This document shows positions 1 through 8,328 of a stretch of 64,000 nt of DNA, piece by piece. Within the stretch, counting starts at the first letter, position 1. Every line of letters begins with the position of its first letter. Under the pieces are notes generated by a model, which was not told the DNA's origin, searched no databases, and was given only the letters and a program-made list of their open reading frames with translations. The stretch is taken from assembly GCA_977020255.1 (NCBI GenBank), contig CDROCS010000506.1, forward strand, positions 744,001 through 808,000, given 5' to 3'. This DNA comes from Obrimoposthia wandeli. Its lineage: Eukaryota. The translations under genes were made by a program, and so were the position numbers.

Positions 1-680
1 AATCTGACTTTGCATTCATGACCCGTGCTGGTACTGAAATTGGCGTTGCTTCAACGAAAGCATTCACCACGCAACTATCAGCTTTATTAATGCTAGTAAC
101 TGCATTAGGTAAAGAGAAAAAGGTAATTAACGCAGAGAAAGAAGCAGAGATTGTGACTGCATTACACGCTTTACCTGCACAAATCGAAACGTCATTATCA
201 TTTGATAAAGAAATCGAAGCCCTTGCAACAGATTTTGCCGATAAGCACCACACATTATTCTTAGGTCGCGGTGAGTTCTACCCTATCGCAATGGAAGCAG
301 CACTTAAGCTGAAAGAGATCTCTTACATTCACGCTGAAGCATACGCAGCTGGTGAATTGAAACACGGTCCTTTAGCACTAGTCGATGCCGACATGCCAGT
401 TGTGGTTATTGCTCCGACGAATGAATTACTAGAAAAACTTAAATCGAACATTGAAGAAGTACGTGCTCGTGGCGGCCTACTGTATGTATTCGCTGACGCA
501 GACGCTGGTTTTGTGGAATCAGAAGGCATGAAGATCATCACTATGCCGCATGTAAGTGAAATTACTGCACCAATCTTCTACACACTACCTATGCAGTTGC
601 TTTCATACCATGTAGCACTGATTAAAGGTACGGATGTGGATCAGCCACGTAACCTAGCGAAAGCTGTAACGGTTGAGTAA
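1..680 (+). CDS. glmS: Glutamine-fructose-6-phosphate aminotransferase, C-terminal part (gene starts before the window)
   Basis: SIS-domain motifs [38 protein letters not shown] and C-terminal [15 protein letters not shown]. The frame is open upstream of the Met at 18. Confidence 0.98.
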
Positions 681-720
681 AGATTACCTTAAAAATTGTT
701 TTAAAAAATAAGTTTAAAAC
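640..720 (+). other. attTn7-type target (TnsD recognition sequence in the last glmS codons); no Tn7 inserted
   Basis: Established knowledge: TnsD binds the sequence coding PRNLAK-VTVE at the glmS 3' end. No tns genes or target-site duplication are seen downstream. Confidence 0.7.
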
Positions 721-780
721 ATAATTTAGAATACCGAATACCAAGCCCCAATCGTTGAGCAATCAGCATTGGGGCTTTTT
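721..780 (+). repeat. 60-bp direct repeat, copy 1 (copy 2 at 3710-3769)
   Basis: ataatttagaataccgaataccaagccccaatcgttgagcaatcagcattggggcttttt versus ataatttaaaatactgaatactaagccccaatcgttgagcaatcagcattggggcttttt; 3 mismatches in 60 bp, all outside the hairpin. Confidence 0.95.
743..780 (+). terminator. glmS intrinsic terminator (copy 1)
   Basis: AAGCCCCAAT-c-GTTGA-GCAA-TCAGC-ATTGGGGCTT hairpin followed by a T-run. Confidence 0.9.
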
Positions 781-863
781 GGTTTATGGCTATAGTTGAT
801 ATATAATCAAAATAAATTTAGGGTCACTTTATAGTATTTATTGATATTAAGGGGGTAATAGGC

Positions 864-1769
864 GTGAATATAGAGCACCTGAAACTATTTGTGCAATTGG
901 CTACCACCAATAATATTAGCTTAGCTGGACAAGAGTTTAATTTATCTCCTGCTGTCGCAAGTTCGTATATAAGTAAACTTGAAAAGAGCCTCAGGGTACG
1001 TTTAGTTTACCGAACAACTCGGAAAGTATCATTAACCGAAGATGGTCATGCCTTTCTTCCTCATGCCAAAGAAGTTCTGAGCACTATTGAAACAGCTTTA
1101 GCATCGGTGGGCGTAGGAGATATAAGCCCTAGAGGAACCTTAAGAATTGCAGCTCCCGCTTCATTTGGTCGCATGCATATTGTCCCTATCATAAAAGAAT
1201 TTTTATCTCGTTATCCGGATCTTAACATTGACATACGACTTACCGATAAAGTTGTCGATTTAGTCGAAGGTGGGTTTGATGTCGCGATCCGTAACGCACC
1301 GCTAAAAGATTCTAATTTAGTTGCTCGTCGACTTGCTCCCGACAAACGTATTATATGCGCATCTCCAAGTTATCTTGCCGAGTTTGGAGAGCCCAGTTCA
1401 CCCAGCGAGTTATTAGATCACCAATGCGTTATATTAACGGGTATTGAAACTTGGGGATTTGATACCGCAGAGGGTCAGATAAACATTAGAGCACGCGGTA
1501 ATTTTAGAACCGATAATGGCGAAGCGATGAGAGATGCATGTGTGAGCGGTTTAGGTATAGCCATCAATGCAACATGGAGTGTATACCAGAATATAGAGCG
1601 CGGCGAATTAGTACAAATATTAAAGGAGCACACTCTCGTGCCAAGCAGCGCAATTTGGGCGGTGTACCCAAGTACACAATTATTAGCCCCAAAAGTAAGA
1701 GCTTTCATCGATTATTTATCATCCCAATACGGTGATCACCCATACTGGGATAATAAACTTGATTGCTGA
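864..1769 (+). CDS. LysR-family transcriptional regulator (DmlR/CrgA-like)
   Basis: N-terminal HTH (LSPAVASSYISKLEKSLRVRLVYRTTRKVSLTEDG) and PBP2 domain (DLVEGGFDVAIR, SPKVRAFID-type end). Confidence 0.93.
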   Translation: MNIEHLKLFVQLATTNNISLAGQEFNLSPAVASSYISKLEKSLRVRLVYRTTRKVSLTEDGHAFLPHAKEVLSTIETALASVGVGDISPRGTLRIAAPASFGRMHIVPIIKEFLSRYPDLNIDIRLTDKVVDLVEGGFDVAIRNAPLKDSNLVARRLAPDKRIICASPSYLAEFGEPSSPSELLDHQCVILTGIETWGFDTAEGQINIRARGNFRTDNGEAMRDACVSGLGIAINATWSVYQNIERGELVQILKEHTLVPSSAIWAVYPSTQLLAPKVRAFIDYLSSQYGDHPYWDNKLDC

Positions 1770-1804
1770 TGTTATTCACTTAATAGCGAGTCATTTGATT
1801 AGCT

Positions 1805-2686
1805 CTATATTTGCTTTGCTTCTCTGCTCAATACAGCCCTCAGCAATTTCTCCGTGTGCAGCCACAAGGCTTTCTGAACATCTATATCGTATGCCTGCTC
1901 ATTCGCTTTAGCGAGTTGCAACAGTGAGAAATATTTTCCTGTCACACCATTAAGTTCAGGCCTGCACGCTAAATATAATTGTGTAAGCGCGCCAGATTCA
2001 GCGTCACCAGCTGAAAAGCCATAAGCTTGCTGTACCATACTGGTATTTAAAAATGACCCAGGGTTTAACGCATTAACACTCACATTATTATCTTTGACCA
2101 ATTCAGCAAAGAAAAAACTAAACATGATCACAGCTAATTTACTCTTAGCATAAGCTTCTGGCGCACTAAATCCATGCTCTATCATCAAATCAGATAATTG
2201 TAATGACTGCTGCGCCTCAGAAGCTATATTAATAATACGTCCTTGAGTTAACGTTAAGGCTGGTAACAATTTCTGGCACAAAAGTACCGTCACCAAATAG
2301 TTAACTTGAAAACGTAGTTCATAGCCATCTTCGCTAAGTAGTCGATTAAATTTATCATCGCTTGCGCCAGGACCCACGCCCGCATTATTAATCAGCACAT
2401 CCAATTTCGGGTGTTCTGACATAAGCTTATCCGCAAATAAATTCACTTGTAAAAGCGAGTTAAAGTCAGCTTGATAACTAAATATTTTCATATTACCTGT
2501 CGTTTGCTTAATACTGTCGACGGTCGCTTGCAGTTTACCCATTGAGCGACCGTGTATTAATACTGTAGCACCACGACTAGCGAGTTTTTCAGCTGTGATC
2601 CTGCCAATACCATCCGTCGCCCCCGTGATAAGCACCGTTTTATCTCGCATAGAAAGATCACTCGTAACAATCGAAGCTTTATGCAT
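1805..2686 (-). CDS. Short-chain dehydrogenase/reductase (retinol-DH-like subgroup)
   Basis: TGATDGIG Rossmann motif, LINNAG, catalytic YAKSK. Confidence 0.92.
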   Translation of the reverse strand: MHKASIVTSDLSMRDKTVLITGATDGIGRITAEKLASRGATVLIHGRSMGKLQATVDSIKQTTGNMKIFSYQADFNSLLQVNLFADKLMSEHPKLDVLINNAGVGPGASDDKFNRLLSEDGYELRFQVNYLVTVLLCQKLLPALTLTQGRIINIASEAQQSLQLSDLMIEHGFSAPEAYAKSKLAVIMFSFFFAELVKDNNVSVNALNPGSFLNTSMVQQAYGFSAGDAESGALTQLYLACRPELNGVTGKYFSLLQLAKANEQAYDIDVQKALWLHTEKLLRAVLSREAKQI

Positions 2687-3531
2687 TATTTAATGTCCTG
2701 AATACCCATCACTAATTGATCCCAATTACGCTGATTCTCGATATCGTTTTGCGCGCCGTTATCGTCAGCATACTGGAAACGTTTCTGCGCAGGTGTCTTA
2801 CTCATTGATTGATAAAGCCAATAAGCTTCTTCCTTAAGTGCCGATTTTATCGGTAAATCAATAGATGCATAAACAACCCGTTTACATGCCTCAATAGATT
2901 CGGCAGGGAATTGAGCAATACGGTTTGCCAATTCATCAACATAAGGACCAATTTTATCTGCATCTAAAGCTTGGTTAATAGTGCCGTAAGCTTGTGCTTG
3001 GTCAGCATCAAAATCTCGAGCACTCAAAATTATCTCTAACGCTCTACCTAAGCCAACCTGGCGCGCCATTCTTGACGCACCACCACCACAAGGTAAGATA
3101 CCCATACCCACTTCCATTTGCATAAACTTCGCTTTACCACGAGCCGCAAAACGCATATCACAAGCCAGCATAAATTCATGACCGCCGCCACGTGCAAACC
3201 CTTCTACTTTGGCAATAGTGGCCTGCGGTAAAGCACTAATACGTTGTAATACTTCCTGCAAATATAATAATCTTACATCTTCTTTCGCAACCGCTGTTGT
3301 TGATATATTTTTGAGAAAACCAGTATCTGCATGGGCAATAAATATCTCAGAATGTGCCGATTGGAAGACCACAACCTTGACACTACGATCATTTTCCAAC
3401 GTTTCAGCAAGACGGTTAAGCTCATCCAGCATAGGAATATCTTGAATATTAACTGGTGCATTATCAAAAGTGACCGTCATAATACCCACTGATTGGACTA
3501 TATTAAATGTGGTGTAATTTGCATGCGTCAT
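2686..3531 (-). CDS. Enoyl-CoA hydratase/isomerase family protein
   Basis: AKVEGFARGGGHEFMLACDMRFA and MEVGMGILPCGGG crotonase motifs. Start placed at the ATG at 3531 behind a GGAAG RBS. The stop overlaps the SDR start (TAATG). Confidence 0.92.
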   Translation of the reverse strand: MTHANYTTFNIVQSVGIMTVTFDNAPVNIQDIPMLDELNRLAETLENDRSVKVVVFQSAHSEIFIAHADTGFLKNISTTAVAKEDVRLLYLQEVLQRISALPQATIAKVEGFARGGGHEFMLACDMRFAARGKAKFMQMEVGMGILPCGGGASRMARQVGLGRALEIILSARDFDADQAQAYGTINQALDADKIGPYVDELANRIAQFPAESIEACKRVVYASIDLPIKSALKEEAYWLYQSMSKTPAQKRFQYADDNGAQNDIENQRNWDQLVMGIQDIK

Positions 3532-3647
3532 TGCTACTTCCTTGAATTTATCAATATCATTAAGTTGTGAGCTAAAGCTTAACACTGCTTTTATTTATTT
3601 ATAATATAGCCAAATAAACATTCAGTTTATGCTTTTCATTGATAATA

Positions 3648-3676
3648 AATAGCTACATCAACAACGCCTTAACCAA
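3648..3676 (+). repeat. Partial copy of the peroxiredoxin upstream region (other copy 5394-5435)
   Basis: aatagctacatcaa (3648-3661 = 5394-5407, exact) followed by caacgccttaaccaa (3662-3676) versus caacgtcttaaccaa (5421-5435); a 13-nt segment is missing from the left copy. Confidence 0.7.
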
Positions 3677-3709
3677 GTTCAATATCGACACTTTTAGCCT
3701 TTTTCAAAA

Positions 3710-3769
3710 ATAATTTAAAATACTGAATACTAAGCCCCAATCGTTGAGCAATCAGCATTGGGGCTTTTT
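3710..3769 (+). repeat. 60-bp direct repeat, copy 2 (duplicate of the glmS terminator region)
   Basis: See copy 1; the hairpin is identical and no plus-strand gene lies upstream of it to terminate. Confidence 0.95.
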
Positions 3770-3870
3770 TTTCGCCAAAAAACTAGCATGATCCAATGTA
3801 AATAATTGCTAAGAAATGTCGACTCTGAACCCAATTAAAAAGATTAACAAAAGTCTTTAGCCCAAGATCT

Positions 3871-3893
3871 AAAAAGCCTCCGGCTAGGAGGCT
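3871..3893 (-). terminator. Intrinsic terminator of the small minus-strand ORF
   Basis: agcctcc-ggcta-ggaggct hairpin with an A5 tract on the left (U-tract on the minus strand). Confidence 0.8.
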
Positions 3894-3924
3894 AAATACA
3901 TTGATAACTATAATTTGAGTAATC

Positions 3925-4095
3925 TTATCCCTGTAACTTCAACTTCTTATGGTGGAGCGAAGCCAGTACCATCTTACAGGCGACGTTGAATGATACATCC
4001 ATACATTCTGAGACTGATTTATGAGAATTAGTTTTCTCAAATATACGCAGCGCCATGTCGCACTTATCTTTACCATATTTATCTAATGAATCCAT
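3925..4095 (-). CDS. 56-aa small protein with possible HTH (below the ORF-track cutoff)
   Basis: Manual translation MDSLDKYGKDKCDMALRIFEKTNSHKSVSECMDVSFNVACKMVLASLHHKKLKLQG; AGGGAAG RBS; own terminator about 30 nt downstream. Confidence 0.6.
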   Translation of the reverse strand: MDSLDKYGKDKCDMALRIFEKTNSHKSVSECMDVSFNVACKMVLASLHHKKLKLQG

Positions 4096-4471
4096 ATCTT
4101 CCCTAATACTTTATTCATACTATTTTATTATAGTATTAGAATTTTTATTTACGTTCAATCAACATCGTTATTTTTTCAGAAAGATCGGTTCAATGGATAT
4201 TCAAGCAGTCACTTAGGGTTGTCGAGTGGCTTTAAACTTCGTTATTGTTCCATATTCTGCTGTCATAACAGAAACGTATCTCACTTTTTACCCAAAGTGG
4301 CTTAGAGTTATTACTCTTCCCATAATATAATTATCTATTACAATTATATTGAATTTATCTAATTGTAATAAATGATTAATATTGAATTTATTGATGATTA
4401 TTTAATAATCATTATACGTAATTCTGTATAATGTGCAGTTAGCCTTTCCTTGAGTTTAAGTGAAATTAACA

Positions 4472-5233
4472 ATGAAGAAGATCCTGTATTGTAATGAATG
4501 TAGTTATAGAAACCTCGAAGAAATCGATGATGATGGTATTTATTTATTCGAATGTAGATCTTGTAAAAAAACTAATTTCATAAATATAGATCAAGAAAAG
4601 TTTGGGCTATTAATTGATCATGGCGTTCTTTCATTTATTGATGGGTACCCTAGAGACGCAACTACTTGTTTTGCCGTAGGCTTAGAACGGTTTTATGAAT
4701 TTGTTATAAAAATAATTTGTAACCGTCAAAACATATCTAGATCTACCTATTTCTCCGTCTGGAGGAGTATGAAAAATTTGTCTGAAAGGCAGAGTGGAGC
4801 TTTTTCAATGTTACTGGCTGTTAACTTTCCTGAAAAAAAACTTACTCTATTAGATAACGAAAAGCCAATAATTGAAGGTGTATCTAGATCTAATACTAAA
4901 ACATGGAAAGAGTTCAGAAATGCTGTTGTGCATAAAGGGTATATTCCTAAATCTCCAGAAGCCAAACCATATTTAGAAATGGTATACCAATATATGGTTG
5001 ATATTTTGTCGGAACTTCAGTTAAATGAAAATGATAGTAATGCCAAATTACAGTACTGGGATTTTGACCGTTATCTCAAACTATCCAAAGATCTCGATCA
5101 TCTTCAGGTACCTCGGAGTTCTATCTATGGAGGTGAGTTCATTAAACCATTAGCTGCTAACCTTAAGTACCCATCGTTTGAGCAGAGAATTGATCACTTT
5201 CTTAAAATGATCCCTATAACATATAGTCGATAA
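4472..5233 (+). CDS. Hypothetical protein: N-terminal CxxC...CxxC Zn-ribbon plus HEPN-like domain
   Basis: CNEC and CRSC pairs; helix [20 protein letters not shown]; RxxxxH motif FRNAVVHKG; AT-rich coding sequence. Confidence 0.65.
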
Positions 5234-5330
5234 AACTTTGTCTGCTGACAGCATTATAGATCAGCGCTTAAATAAAAAATCTATCTCGATAGCTAAAACC
5301 AATCGAAATTTCATTATTGATAGATTTAAC

Positions 5331-5367
5331 ATAGCTTTTACCTATCAAAAGAAAAGATTCAATCGAT
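5331..5367 (+). promoter_or_regulatory. OxyR-type binding site upstream of the peroxiredoxin
   Basis: ATAG-cttttac-CTAT-caaaaga-AAAG-attcaat-CGAT fits ATAGntnnnanCTAT-N7-ATAGntnnnanCTAT; hybrid Prx-Grx genes are known OxyR targets. Confidence 0.65.
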
Positions 5368-5501
5368 TAGACCAATACTGTGATATTTTGCATAATAGCT
5401 ACATCAAGACGAGGCAGACACAACGTCTTAACCAAATACTGTTTATAACAAACACTTTAAATAAAAGTAGCTTAATTAAGAGCTACACTAAGGAATATAT
5501 T

Positions 5502-6236
5502 ATGACTACATTAGTATCGAAAGAAGGCCAAGCAGTTCCTCAAGTTACATTCCCAATCCGTCAAGGTGACGCATGGGTAAACCGTACAACTGAAGAGCTA
5601 TTTGCTAACAAAACTGTGATTGTATTCAGCCTGCCAGGCGCATTCACACCAACTTGTTCATCAAGCCATTTACCACGTTACAACGAACTAGCTAGCGTAT
5701 TCTCTGCACACGGTGTTGATGACATCCTATGTGTATCAGTTAACGATACTTTCGTAATGAACGCTTGGAAAGACGCACAAGAAGCAGAAAACATTACTTT
5801 CATCCCAGACGGTAACGGTGCATTTTCTGAAGGTATGGGCATGTTAGTAGACAAGTCTGATATCGGTTTTGGCAAGCGTTCATGGCGTTACAGCATGCTG
5901 GTTAAAAACGGCGTGGTAGCAAAAATGTTCATCGAAGCTGACGAACCAGGCGACCCGTTCAAAGTTTCTGATGCTGATACTATGCTTGCTTATGTAGCAC
6001 CAGAATACAAAGTACAAGAGTCAATTACCGTATTCTCTAAACCTGGTTGCCCGTTCTGCGCTAAAGCAAAACAAACGTTAATCGACCAAGGTCTAAGCTA
6101 CGAAGAAGTTGTACTAGGTAAAGACGCAACAACAGTAAGTCTACGTGCTGTAACCGGTCTTAGCACAGTGCCACAAATCTTCATCGGTGGTAAACACATC
6201 GGTGGTAGCGAAGAATTAGACGCACACTTCGCTTAA
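5502..6236 (+). CDS. Hybrid peroxiredoxin (Prx5)-glutaredoxin
   Basis: [17 protein letters not shown] peroxidatic motif, [14 protein letters not shown]-terminal Grx CPFC and TVPQIFIGG. Start at the ATG at 5502 after an AAGGAA RBS. Confidence 0.96.
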
Positions 6237-6328
6237 GTATTTCGTTTCAGTCATTACAAGATAAGACTGAGATCATAGTCAAAAGCATACTAACGAATAG
6301 TCATACTCACATGCCATGTTCGTCAATT

Positions 6329-6355
6329 AAGGAAGCAGCAATGCTTCCTTTTTTT
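6329..6355 (+). terminator. Intrinsic terminator after the peroxiredoxin
   Basis: aaggaagca-gcaa-tgcttcctt plus T-run. Confidence 0.85.
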
Positions 6356-6645
6356 TCGTCTGTTTTTTATCTTTTTTGATCAAAACTTTTCTATCGATTA
6401 CTTATCAATAACCTTAACAATAAAGCCCTTTCCGCCTTAAAATAAACAAACACTAATAATCACTAAAACAGCCAACCTTAATTATATTATTTATCAACGC
6501 TAGCTCACAAACACATCACGGGAATGATATTTAAACGCCAAGCGTCGTAAAAACACCATAAAACTTACTACACTTCTATAAATTCAGTAATTTACTCTCA
6601 AGTTTATTCTCCACAGCACCATTACAGGACGTAAAGCGAGGCGCT

Positions 6646-8328
6646 ATGCTAAAAAATCTTAAATTCACAACCAAATTATATGCCGGGTATGCCGTAATAT
6701 TATCACTCATGGTGAGTATTACACTCGTTGTCTTATTTAGTGTTAAATCACTAGAAAATAACTTTAGTTGGGTCAATCATACCCACGAAGTCCTCGCCAA
6801 AGCATCCAAAATAGAAGCAGCAGCCGTTGATATGGAAACAGGCATGCGCGGTTTTTTACTCGCAGGAGAAAATCAATTCTTAGACCCTTACAATCAAGGT
6901 AAATCTCAGTTTGATAAATTGAGTGATGAACTTGCTAACGCGGTCGCCGATAACCCAGTACAAGTAGCGTTAGTCACAGAAAGTAAACGTACGATAGATA
7001 ACTGGATAAACCTTATCGCCGAAAAACAGATCGCATTACGACGTCAGGTAGGCAATGGAAAAACCATGGATGACGTGGCAGCCTTGGTTGGAGAGGCAAA
7101 AGGTAAACAGTATTTTGATAAGTTCAGACAACAAATAGCCACCTTTAAAGAAACCGAATCTAGTTTGATGGCCAAGCGTATGGTGGCATTAACTGAAACC
7201 GAATCAGCAGTCATCAACGTCACGGTATTAGGTACGCTTTTTGCTGTGATCATGGGTTGTTTAATTGCGATGTGGTTAACCCGCCATATTATGAATCTAC
7301 TCGGTGGAGAACCAACTTATATTGCCGAGATAGCTAAATCCGTCGCGGCTGGTGATTTAACCATAGAATTAAAAAGTGATGGTAATGACCGTGGTATTTT
7401 CGCTGAAATGAAAAACATGATCGCCAACCTACAAGATAAGGCCAAACTCGCACAGACCATTGCTGCGGGAGACCTTAATAATAAAGTGATACTCGCCTCT
7501 GACCAAGATTCGGTTGGTCTCGCACTGCAAGCAATGACTAATAATTTAAATGAAGTACTCGGTCAAACTCAATTAACCAGTATTGAAATATCACAAGGTA
7601 GTTATAGCGTTTCAGAAACCAGTTCTGCGCTATCTGAAGGTGCCTCAATACAAGCGTCAAGTTTAGAGAATATTTCAGCGTCGTTAAATCAGTTAAGCAC
7701 GCAAATCAATGTCAATGCTCAGAACGCTAACCAAGCACAAGAGCTCGCCATGCTAGCGCAAACGTCAGCAGAGCAAGGTATCGAGAAAATGGAAACTATG
7801 ATTGCTGCCATGTCTGAGATTTCACAGGCCAGTGAAAGTATTGCAGAGTTCATTAACACCATTGATGACATTGCCGCGCAAACCAATTTACTTGCTCTAA
7901 ATGCTGCTATTGAAGCTGCTCGAGCAGGTGAGCAAGGTCGTGGTTTTGCCGTAGTAGCAGATGAAGTCCGCAACTTAGCCGCTAGAAGTACAACAGCAGC
8001 AGAAGAAACCTCAAAACTGATTGCCAGTTCTGTCGATAAAACTAAAAATGGTAGCTTGATTGCCAGTGAAACGGCACACAGTTTAAAAAGTATTTTTGAA
8101 AGTATCAGCCAAACTGCAGCACTGGTTGATCAAATTGCCAATGCCAGTAATGAGCAAGCGATTGGCGCTGAAGAAATTAACCAGGGCGTTAGCGAAGTCG
8201 ACGGGGTCACGCAACAAAATAACAGCGCAGCACAAGAAAGTGCCGCAGCGGCAGAGCAATTATCGCAGCAAGCTGAGTTACTCAAATCTATGTTGTCTCG
8301 TTTTAAGCTTGCTTCAACCTGCGCATAA
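6646..8328 (+). CDS. Methyl-accepting chemotaxis protein with CHASE3 sensor domain
   Basis: Two TM helices, CHASE3 signature (WVNHTHEV...[13 protein letters not shown]...FLDPY), signalling hairpin [37 protein letters not shown]. Confidence 0.96.

What the first reader, a model, noticed from the sequence alone, without database searches (positions are those of the whole stretch)
721..5435. Two accessory modules stacked between duplicated boundary sequences in the glmS-peroxiredoxin slot
Seen: the order is glmS - T - [LysR, SDR, ECH] - P' - T' - [56-aa ORF, Zn-HEPN] - P - prx. T and T' are 60-bp copies of the glmS terminator region (721-780, 3710-3769). P' (3648-3676) is a gapped copy of the prx upstream sequence P (5394-5435). 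Each module therefore starts with a terminator copy and ends with a prx-upstream copy. No integrase, transposase or tns gene is present. Established: the glmS 3' end is the Tn7 hotspot. Inference: this is a cassette-exchange or cassette-accumulation locus at attTn7 that does not look like Tn7, with alternative fillers of the slot added in tandem by recombination at short conserved flanks.
Basis: partly seen in the sequence, partly recalled or inferred. Interest (0 to 1): 0.72.

Follow-up and report, generated by a model that had tools for sequence, protein, structure and literature searches.

The report
Two alleles stacked at glmS hotspot
In this marine Moritella bacterium the gap between two housekeeping genes (glmS and a peroxiredoxin) collects foreign genes across the whole genus, and here two alternative fillings were joined end to end by one imprecise recombination that left duplicate copies of the gap's edges. 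It is a clean natural example of a known process, not a new gene-shuffling machine.

Summary
T (713-780) and T' (3702-3769) are 68-nt copies at 93% identity, with identical 35-nt terminator hairpins. They are the only two copies in the assembly. P' is a real but decayed copy of the prx promoter and 5'UTR core.

The glmS-prx gap is hypervariable in Moritellaceae. Twelve species genomes give two empty gaps (129 and 199 nt) and eight or more different fillers, including true Tn7-like elements in two species.

A metagenome contig (L128) carries glmS, a single T, and the 56-aa-ORF unit directly after it, which is a module-2-only allele. Other strains (runs X1, X3 and X4, and a second JGI contig) carry LysR-SDR-ECH and the 56-aa-ORF unit but no HEPN gene; X1 also shows P' and T', and the JGI contig's spacing fits the same stack.

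P' and P are linked to different upstream haplotypes. The stack therefore most likely joined two alleles by one duplicative recombination, probably anchored by homology in glmS and illegitimate at the other end.

T is a lineage-specific form of the glmS terminator, not a general cassette boundary. No recombinase or Tn7 end is present. "Module 2" is composite: a rare 56-aa ORFan unit that also lies in IS- and toxin-antitoxin-rich regions elsewhere, plus a strain-specific zinc-ribbon/HEPN-fold gene.

I class it as a known kind, an integration hotspot with a recombination scar. Interest is moderate to low.

The parts
1..680 (+). 3' part of glmS (SIS domain), the left core flank of the slot
   Evidence: Pfam SIS. 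It is 84-94% identical in 12 Moritellaceae genomes, and homology ends at the stop codon.
681..712 (+). AT-rich spacer with a 13-nt unit whose copy number differs between strains
   Evidence: Direct repeat D6. Run X1 has one extra 13-nt unit and X3 has two (table 4).
713..780 (+). T: the glmS intrinsic terminator (hairpin 743-777 plus U run), copy 1
   Evidence: Related 'AAGCCYC...GGGGCTTTTTT' terminators follow glmS in G001, G008 and G012.
864..1769 (+). Module 1: LysR-family regulator
   Evidence: Pfam HTH_1 plus LysR_substrate. Homologous to the LysR of the same module in L132.
1805..2686 (-). Module 1: short-chain dehydrogenase/reductase
   Evidence: Pfam adh_short.
2686..3531 (-). Module 1: enoyl-CoA hydratase/isomerase family protein. 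ATG at 3531; a GTG at 3585 is also open.
   Evidence: Pfam ECH_1. No ortholog in 13 Moritellaceae genomes. The same ECH-(SnoaL)-SDR plus convergent LysR module occurs in an unrelated contig.
3629..3692 (+). P': deletion-decayed relic of a prx upstream region. It comprises a 17-nt piece of the G007/L090-type extension, the -10/5'UTR core with 13 nt missing, and a weak tail.
   Evidence: Run X1 keeps the 13 nt plus 28 more. The JGI contig's ECH-to-ORF56 gap is 48 nt longer. The small 5'UTR hairpin is lost.
3702..3769 (+). T': second copy of the glmS terminator (hairpin 3732-3766)
   Evidence: In L128 a single T carries the left flank of T and the right flank of T'.
3770..4283 (-). Sequence shared with the L128 allele. 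It includes the ~330-460-nt 'unit56': terminator 3875-3893, 56-aa ORFan 3925-4095, and its upstream region.
   Evidence: 94% identical to L128, where it lies directly after glmS-T. 89% identical to a copy elsewhere in G002. Depth is 5-9x in X1. Only 6 relatives in 5.8 billion proteins. Other copies sit beside RelB/ParE, IS3 and IS21.
4284..5238 (+). Strain-specific segment carrying the zinc-ribbon plus HEPN-fold gene (ORF 4472-5233), with a 20%-GC upstream region containing a palindrome at 4338-4368
   Evidence: Zero depth in X1, X3 and X4, and an X1 joint from 4283 to 5239. Absent from JGI contig 3300045300. GC is 0.33 against 0.40 for the window. Motifs and fold.
5239..5501 (+). prx upstream region (right flank). 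5250-5288 is a haplotype shared with G013, PE36 and G006. The conserved block starts at 5289. A promoter-like site lies at 5368-5396, and the P core (-10 and 5'UTR hairpin) at 5394-5435.
5502..6236 (+). Peroxiredoxin-glutaredoxin fusion gene (244 aa), the right core flank
   Evidence: Pfam Redoxin plus Glutaredoxin. 100% identical to the M. dasanensis protein.

Best explanation
The short gap between the glmS terminator and the prx regulatory region is a genus-wide integration and replacement hotspot in Moritella. In the lineage of this window, two different alleles of that slot were concatenated by a single duplicative recombination.

One allele was glmS-T-[LysR, SDR, ECH]-prx upstream-prx. 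The other was glmS-T-[56-aa ORF unit]-prx upstream-prx. The event joined the prx 5'UTR of the first allele (about 55 nt before the start codon) to the spacer just after the glmS stop codon of the second. This gave glmS-T-M1-P'-T'-unit56-P-prx.

The simplest route is one homologous crossover in glmS or T plus an illegitimate or short-homology join at the other end. That is homology-facilitated illegitimate recombination of incoming DNA, or equivalently Campbell-type insertion of a circular fragment.

P' lost its function and is eroding by deletions. Both terminator hairpins are kept intact. The zinc-ribbon/HEPN-fold gene was added later, in this strain only. No element-encoded recombinase is involved.

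Shown: the repeats, the hotspot, the module-2-only and stacked alleles, the strain-specific HEPN gene, and the different haplotypes linked to P and P'.

Inferred: the order of events and the recombination pathway.
For: Hotspot: in 12 Moritellaceae species the gap ranges from 129 nt to 42 kb. Two gaps are empty and at least eight have different fillers. Homology to the window stops at the glmS stop and resumes at 5251-5342.

Stack shared by strains: X1 shows M1, P' and T'. X1, X3 and X4 show M1 and unit56 without the HEPN gene. JGI contig 3300045300 has the gene order LysR-SDR-ECH-56aa-prx.

Allele without M1: L128 reads glmS, one T, then window 3770-4239 at 94%.

M1 once abutted prx: P' holds the prx -10/5'UTR core and a 17-nt piece that in G007/L090 lies next to the prx regulatory block. 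X1 keeps 41 nt more of it.

Two alleles rather than one duplicated allele: P' carries the L090-type extension, while P carries the G013/PE36/G006-type extension at the same position.

T is not a dispersed repeat: there are two copies in the assembly and one T-like hairpin in 13 family genomes.

No mobility genes and no TnsB-type end repeats.

M1 is a coherent transferable module found in an unrelated context.

Concept: hotspots between the same two core genes mostly lack integrases, and alleles spread by flanking homology (PMC2617782, read).
Against: No M1-only allele was found, so the donor allele is inferred only from P'.

L128 could equally be a derivative that lost M1 by T x T' recombination. 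Its T is exactly the hybrid such a deletion would leave, so the direction of the event is unresolved.

The junction (about 3690-3702) is AT-rich, and no convincing microhomology can be demonstrated.

Natural competence or another DNA-entry route in this Moritella was not examined.

Only 17 nt support the L090-type assignment of the P' extension in the window itself. The longer support comes from X1 contig ends reported by read laying.
Confidence: 0.66

Rival explanations
1. In-situ tandem duplication. Unequal sister-chromosome exchange duplicated either the whole filled slot (T-M1-P) or a still empty intergenic region (T-spacer-P). The two copies were then filled or replaced independently.
For: It produces the same P'|T' novel joint. 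T and T' were closer in the past: X1 shares the T' state at one T position and the T state at one T' position, which leaves about 3 of 68 ancestral differences. Empty slots exist. Weak AT-rich similarity between the prx 5'UTR and the glmS-T spacer could mediate unequal exchange.
Against: It needs at least one further replacement to explain why P' and P carry different upstream haplotypes and why the contents are unrelated. No remnant of M1 follows T'.
Confidence: 0.17
2. M1-P' is a non-autonomous integrative element (CIME-like). It is flanked by 68-bp att repeats (T and T') and is mobilised in trans by a recombinase encoded elsewhere, so modules accrete site-specifically at the glmS terminator.
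For: M1 is bounded by direct repeats at the 3' side of a conserved gene, and an 'empty site' allele with a single hybrid repeat exists (L128). Earlier notes of this scan report recombinase-linked site families in this genome. In another Moritella contig, unit56 lies between two copies of such a palindromic site.
Against: No integrase lies in or next to the slot. T occurs only at this locus. The palindromic site family is absent from the window. The 'element' ends in a relic of the neighbouring chromosomal promoter, which a site-specific element would not carry. Other species' fillers lack T.
Confidence: 0.08
3. The stack is the decayed remains of successive Tn7-like insertions at attTn7 whose tns genes and ends have been lost.
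For: Intact TnsABCDE elements sit at this site in PE36 and G006, with a 5-bp duplication in PE36. G005 and G007 keep a truncated Tn7 right end after glmS.
Against: No TnsB-site-like repeats are found in the window even at 3-4 mismatches. The TnsB query found no match in the assembly, although the tool marks an empty answer as uninformative. Tn7 inserts between the glmS stop and the terminator, whereas here the cargo lies downstream of the terminator. Stacking of Tn7 elements would not place a prx promoter relic between modules.
Confidence: 0.05
4. Assembly artefact that merges two co-occurring strains' alleles.
For: Run X18, probably the source sample, contains a second Moritella allele at low depth (table 5c).
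Against: The P'|T' joint is unique sequence, spanned by an independent contig with 0 differences. The joint is also present in another study's run, and a JGI contig has matching gene order and spacing.
Confidence: 0.01

Closest known systems
Chromosomal integration hotspots between two fixed core genes (E. coli; Touchon et al. 2009, PMC2617782)
   Same: Unrelated inserts occupy the same interval between the same two core genes in different genomes. Most lack integrases. Alleles can spread by homologous recombination in the flanks.
   Different: This slot is a single short terminator-to-promoter gap that is also an attTn7 neighbourhood. One lineage preserves a sequence-level scar (duplicated terminator and promoter relic) of an additive event rather than a replacing one.
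Tn7 and Tn7-like elements at attTn7 downstream of glmS (PMC2918618; island formation in PMC11014353)
   Same: The same chromosomal address. Two Moritella species carry bona fide TnsABCDE elements there, and two more carry a right-end relic.
   Different: The window has no tns genes, no end repeats and no 5-bp duplication. Its cargo lies on the other side of the glmS terminator.
Homology-facilitated illegitimate recombination during natural transformation (known from Acinetobacter, Streptococcus and Pseudomonas stutzeri; recalled from the literature, term found in PMC8116780 and PMC5312590)
   Same: One homologous anchor plus one illegitimate join adds foreign DNA and can duplicate the sequence next to the anchor. 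This is the geometry seen here.
   Different: It is inferred from sequence only. Competence of this Moritella, and microhomology at the joint, are not shown.
Tandem accretion of integrative elements and CIMEs flanked by att repeats (for example phage-ICE tandems, PMC13651849)
   Same: Modules lie in tandem, separated by a repeated boundary sequence, and an allele with a single repeat exists.
   Different: There is no integrase. The repeat is the host gene's own terminator and occurs nowhere else. The internal boundary also contains a relic of the neighbouring host promoter.

Membership tests
Tn7-like transposon at attTn7 | tnsA/B/C plus a target selector (tnsD/tniQ) within the element | tested here: not met
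   Pfam and NCBIfam on all slot ORFs give none. The positive control is met: PE36 ORFs hit TnsA, TnsC, TnsD/TniQ and TnsE.
Tn7-like transposon at attTn7 | Terminal TGT...ACA ends with multiple TnsB-binding repeats, and a 5-bp target duplication about 25 bp after the glmS stop | tested here: not met
   The PE36-type 20-mer has no match at 3 or fewer mismatches anywhere in the window, and only one chance-level match at 4. PE36 itself shows the repeats and an ATTTA duplication. Only this one end-repeat type was tested.
Integron-type cassette array | An integrase with an adjacent attI, and cassettes each ending in an attC-type imperfect palindrome repeated many times | tested here: not met
   No tyrosine recombinase in the slot. 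T has 2 copies only. The palindromic site that flanks unit56 in L126 is absent from the window.
Integration hotspot (sensu PMC2617782) | [quoted passage not shown] | tested here: met
   Twelve genomes give 2 empty gaps and at least 8 different fillers between glmS and prx.
Integration hotspot (sensu PMC2617782) | Spread of alleles by homologous recombination in the flanks | not testable with these tools
   This needs population genomes and phylogenetic incongruence of glmS and prx. The only hints are uneven divergence between X1 and the window (M1 99%; 3661-4046 93%).
Integrative element or CIME flanked by att repeats | Direct repeats at both ends, and an empty-site allele with one repeat | tested here: met
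   T and T' flank M1-P'. L128 has one hybrid T.
Integrative element or CIME flanked by att repeats | A cognate site-specific recombinase (in cis or trans) acting on the repeat | tested here: inconclusive
   None in cis. A trans-acting enzyme cannot be excluded. T is unique to this locus.
HEPN-domain protein (the 253-aa ORF) | Rx4-6H motif in a four-helix up-down bundle | tested here: met
   RNAVVH is invariant in R, N and H across 30 homologues. The AF2 model has pLDDT 79. Top structural matches are HEPN domains: 4nqf Z 9.1, 2hsb Z 8.7, sacsin HEPN Z 8.0, and the AbiA HEPN region Z 7.8. These Z values are below the tool's caution line for helical bundles, so the fold is likely but not proven.
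HEPN-domain protein (the 253-aa ORF) | RNase or toxin activity | not testable with these tools
   No PADLOC or Pfam family. Relatives occur in phrog_19381, in SPbeta-like phages and in an integrase-linked island.

The most novel reading that the evidence does not exclude
The duplicated glmS terminator is a working recombination handle. The 38-nt perfectly identical stretch of T and T' would let M1-P' loop out as a circle and re-enter any chromosome that carries T. The population would then switch between 'with M1' (window, X1) and 'without M1' (L128-type) states, and could pass the module on. That would be a recombinase-free, terminator-bounded cassette shuttle at a hotspot that other fillers could also use.
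Probability: 0.13. Interest if true: 0.6.

Novelty: new member of a known kind. Interest (0 to 1): 0.36.

Why it matters
Hotspots that gather accessory genes without any mobile-element machinery are common, but how DNA gets added to them is rarely visible at the sequence level.

Here the scar survives: a second terminator fused to a decaying copy of the neighbour's promoter. The allele without the insertion also survives, and so do strains that differ in how far the scar has eroded. Together these make a small, well-resolved natural case of additive recombination at a hotspot.

The slot also sits beside an active Tn7 attachment site, and in different species it collects metabolic, metal-resistance and defence genes. 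It does not reveal a new mechanism.

Tried and rejected
- **T as a dispersed repeat:** rejected. There are 2 copies in the assembly and one T-like hairpin in 13 family genomes.
- **T as a Tn7 end relic:** rejected for the PE36-type repeat. T instead resembles the native glmS terminators of species with empty slots.
- **Rfam families in 1-7000:** none found.
- **5250-5288 as a copS remnant:** considered and dropped. It is a shared upstream haplotype containing a palindrome in PE36 and G013.
- **11-8-11 palindromic sites** reported elsewhere in this genome: none in the slot.
- **Metagenome scans** for the T hairpin and for unit56: both blank, possibly because near-identical records are withheld.
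- **Exact-protein look-ups** of the HEPN, SDR and 56-aa proteins: blank.
- **Source of M1 within the family:** no ortholog found.
- **M1-only allele:** searched for and not found. A low-depth X18 contig at first looked like one, but the depth arithmetic shows it matches only about 17 nt on the left, so it is a different (L090-like) allele.
- **Second example of terminator duplication:** sought in G013 and not found.


Full report
**Where the window comes from.** The window is G000:C506:744001-808000, in a 1.35-Gb assembly of 6912 contigs. The assembly contains several different bacteria, because glmS homologues at 68-78% identity lie on other contigs. The contig itself is a Moritella. The Prx-Grx protein (true start 5502, 244 aa) is 100% identical to that of M. 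dasanensis ArB 0140, and the six best loci in the species collection are all Moritella.

- T (713-780) and T' (3702-3769) are 68 nt long and 93% identical.
- Their 35-nt hairpin core is identical. It occurs twice in the window against 0 expected by chance and twice in the whole assembly.
- Both copies fold into strong hairpins followed by U runs, so they look like intrinsic terminators.
- P' matches the prx upstream core as 13/13 plus 15/16 positions around a 13-nt gap. The local alignment scores 36, above every one of 500 shuffles (maximum 31).
- Pfam and NCBIfam confirm LysR, SDR, ECH and Prx-Grx. They find no family for the 56-aa ORF or the 253-aa ORF, and no integrase, transposase or Tns family in any slot ORF. 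PADLOC also finds nothing for these two ORFs or for LysR.
- The junction is not an assembly error. A Logan contig of run X18 covers 751-3718 without a difference. Run X1, from a different study, shows P' running into T'. A JGI contig has the matching gene order and spacing.

**What P is.** The P core lies at the -10 element and the start of the prx 5'UTR. A promoter-like site ends at 5396. The core, with a small hairpin, is conserved in every Moritella prx copy, including paralogues. By eye, 5331-5367 fits the OxyR-type consensus that I recall from the literature. That is a lead only and was not tested.

**The slot is a genus-wide hotspot.** Homology between the window and every other species stops at the glmS stop codon (680) and resumes between 5251 and 5342. 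The glmS-to-prx gap in 12 Moritellaceae species genomes is:

| Genome | Gap | Content |
|---|---|---|
| G012 | 129 nt | empty |
| G008 | 199 nt | empty |
| G009 | 1.1 kb | a LysR gene |
| G010 | 1.8 kb | an MFS transporter |
| G007 | 2.4 kb | an SNF transporter |
| G005 | not measured (contig break) | left flank like G007 |
| G001 | 5 kb | AraC, a beta-lactamase-family gene, CMD and an unknown |
| G002, G003 | 6.4 kb | copper-resistance genes |
| G013 | 10 kb | reverse transcriptase plus AAA_21 ATPase, ahead of the copper genes |
| G006 | 30 kb | Tn7-like element |
| G004 (PE36) | 42 kb | Tn7-like element plus copper genes |

. The two empty slots show the basic architecture: glmS, a terminator of the form AAGCCYC...GGGGCTTTTTT, a short spacer, and the prx regulatory block. 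T is this lineage's version of that terminator and is not a shared cassette boundary.

**Tn7 is real here, but it is not this.** PE36 carries TnsA, TnsC, TnsD/TniQ and TnsE hits, a TnsB-sized ORF, three TnsB-type repeats next to glmS, a TGT...ACA element and an ATTTA duplication. The element is inserted between the glmS stop and the terminator. G006 has the same five-gene set. G005 and G007 retain a truncated right end. The window has no such repeat even at 3-4 mismatches. Its cargo lies on the far side of the terminator.

**Relatives of the stack.** Four runs were laid on 500-5700.
- X1, X3 and X4 contain M1 at about 99% identity and a multi-copy signal over 3806-4153.
- All three have zero depth over 4328-5197, so they lack the HEPN gene. 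X1 has a joint from 4283 to 5239.
- X1 also has T' at single-copy depth. Its P' still has the 13 nt missing in the window, plus 28 further letters.
- JGI contig 3300045300 shows LysR-SDR-ECH-56aa-prx. Its ECH-to-ORF56 gap is 48 nt longer, and its ORF56-to-prx gap is about 830 nt shorter.

So the stack predates the split of these strains, P' is eroding, and the HEPN gene was gained or kept only in this strain.

**The key relative is L128** (JGI 3300055726). It reads glmS (93% identical), one T, and then window 3770-4239 at 94%. There is no M1 and no P'. In the three-way alignment, its T has the left flank of T and the right flank of T'. It is either the state before M1 was inserted or the product of a T x T' deletion.

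**Two alleles, not one duplicated allele.** Just upstream of P', the window has a 17-nt stretch. In G007/L090 the same stretch begins a 53-nt extension that abuts the prx regulatory block. X1 retains more of that extension. The functional P is preceded by a different sequence at the same position (5250-5288), which is shared with G013, PE36 and G006. M1 therefore once sat directly beside a prx of one haplotype, while the unit56 allele carries another.

The joint links the prx 5'UTR to the spacer a few bases after the glmS stop. The most economical history is one event with a homologous crossover in glmS or T and an illegitimate join at the other end. The alternatives are given as rivals: tandem duplication followed by replacement, a trans-mobilised element with T as its att site, and decayed Tn7 stacking.

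**The modules.**
- **M1** has genome-like GC (0.41-0.42) but no ortholog in 13 family genomes. The same ECH-(SnoaL)-SDR plus convergent LysR set occurs in an unrelated contig at 70-78% nucleotide identity over coding sequence only. A LysR-ECH pair lies on a Vibrio fortis plasmid. The ECH itself is 75-86% identical across several phyla.
- **unit56** encodes an ORFan with only six relatives in 5.8 billion proteins. Other copies lie next to RelB/ParE and IS3, between two copies of a palindromic site (L126), next to IS21 (L131), or near IS110 fragments and a caspase-like gene (G002).
- **The 253-aa protein** has an N-terminal four-cysteine ribbon and invariant DGY.R, LERFYE, SERQ and RN...H motifs. 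Its model has pLDDT 79. The best structural matches are HEPN domains at Z 9.1, 8.7 and 8.0; Foldseek alone was weak. Relatives occur in phrog_19381, in SPbeta-like phages and in an integrase-linked island.

**Comparison with what is known.** The locus behaves like the integration hotspots described for E. coli. There, unrelated inserts recur between the same two core genes, most hotspots lack integrases, and alleles spread by flanking homology (PMC2617782). It shares its address with attTn7 islands (PMC2918618, PMC11014353). It fails the membership tests for Tn7-like elements and for integrons. It meets the structural half of the test for an att-flanked integrative element, but not the recombinase half.

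**Verdict.** This is a new member of a known kind. It is moderately interesting as a well-resolved scar of additive recombination at a hotspot.

Noticed in passing
L083-L085 (G004:C110:16500-62500) and L102-L103 (G006:C1:540400-572500): Two Moritella species carry intact Tn7-like elements (TnsABCDE) at attTn7. The PE36 element is about 32 kb with NRPS cargo and an ATTTA target duplication. The G006 element is about 30 kb with a type I restriction enzyme, a kinase-helicase and a cellulose-synthase-like gene.
   Followed up: partly
L088 (G005:C137) and L090/L104 (G007), just after the glmS stop: A truncated Tn7 right end remains: the terminal TGTATTCGAGTAATAA and one TnsB-type repeat instead of three. 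This is a fossil of an earlier Tn7-like insertion beside the SNF transporter filler.
   Followed up: partly
L101:1009-3628 (G013): A reverse transcriptase (RVT_1) plus an AAA_21/AbiEii-like ATPase, a likely defence pair, is inserted between glmS and the copper-resistance module. It replaces the terminator instead of duplicating it.
   Followed up: partly
L126:6440-7510; own genome C506:1165068 and C506:3437551: In another Moritella contig, unit56 lies between two copies of a palindromic site (GTTCGCTA..TAGCGAAC, followed by CACAAT) next to RelB/ParE and an IS3. The same palindrome core occurs at a few places in this assembly. It may be the site family noted in earlier findings s1-237367 and s1-241126.
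   Followed up: partly
window:681-712: A 13-nt AT-rich unit between glmS and T differs in copy number between strains (X1 has one more, X3 two more).
   Followed up: no
window:9735-12211: A second variable spot 3.5 kb downstream of prx. The window has a 691-aa ORF on the minus strand, M. dasanensis has a PAS-GGDEF gene, and GCA_002836355 has nothing.
   Followed up: no
window:2686-3531: The ECH-family protein is 75-86% identical to proteins from cyanobacteria, Bacteroidota, Planctomycetota and alpha- and gammaproteobacteria. That is unusually high conservation across phyla for an unnamed crotonase.
   Followed up: no
window:5405-5430 and prx upstream regions of L003-L008 and L085: The prx 5'UTR core, with a small hairpin (AAGACG..CGTCTT), is nearly invariant in all Moritella prx copies, including paralogues. 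It is followed by a variable number of ~14-nt AT-rich repeats.
   Followed up: no
L085:3830-3900 and L101:10888-10950: A perfect 11-9-11 palindrome (GGATTAGATCT..AGATCTAATCC) lies just upstream of the prx regulatory block in PE36 and G013. The window keeps only a decayed version at 5250-5288.
   Followed up: no
G000 contigs C6357, C253, C1564, C1089, C2834: The 1.35-Gb assembly holds glmS and prx homologues at 66-79% identity on other contigs, so it contains several different bacteria besides this Moritella. Run X18 also holds a second Moritella slot allele at low depth.
   Followed up: partly
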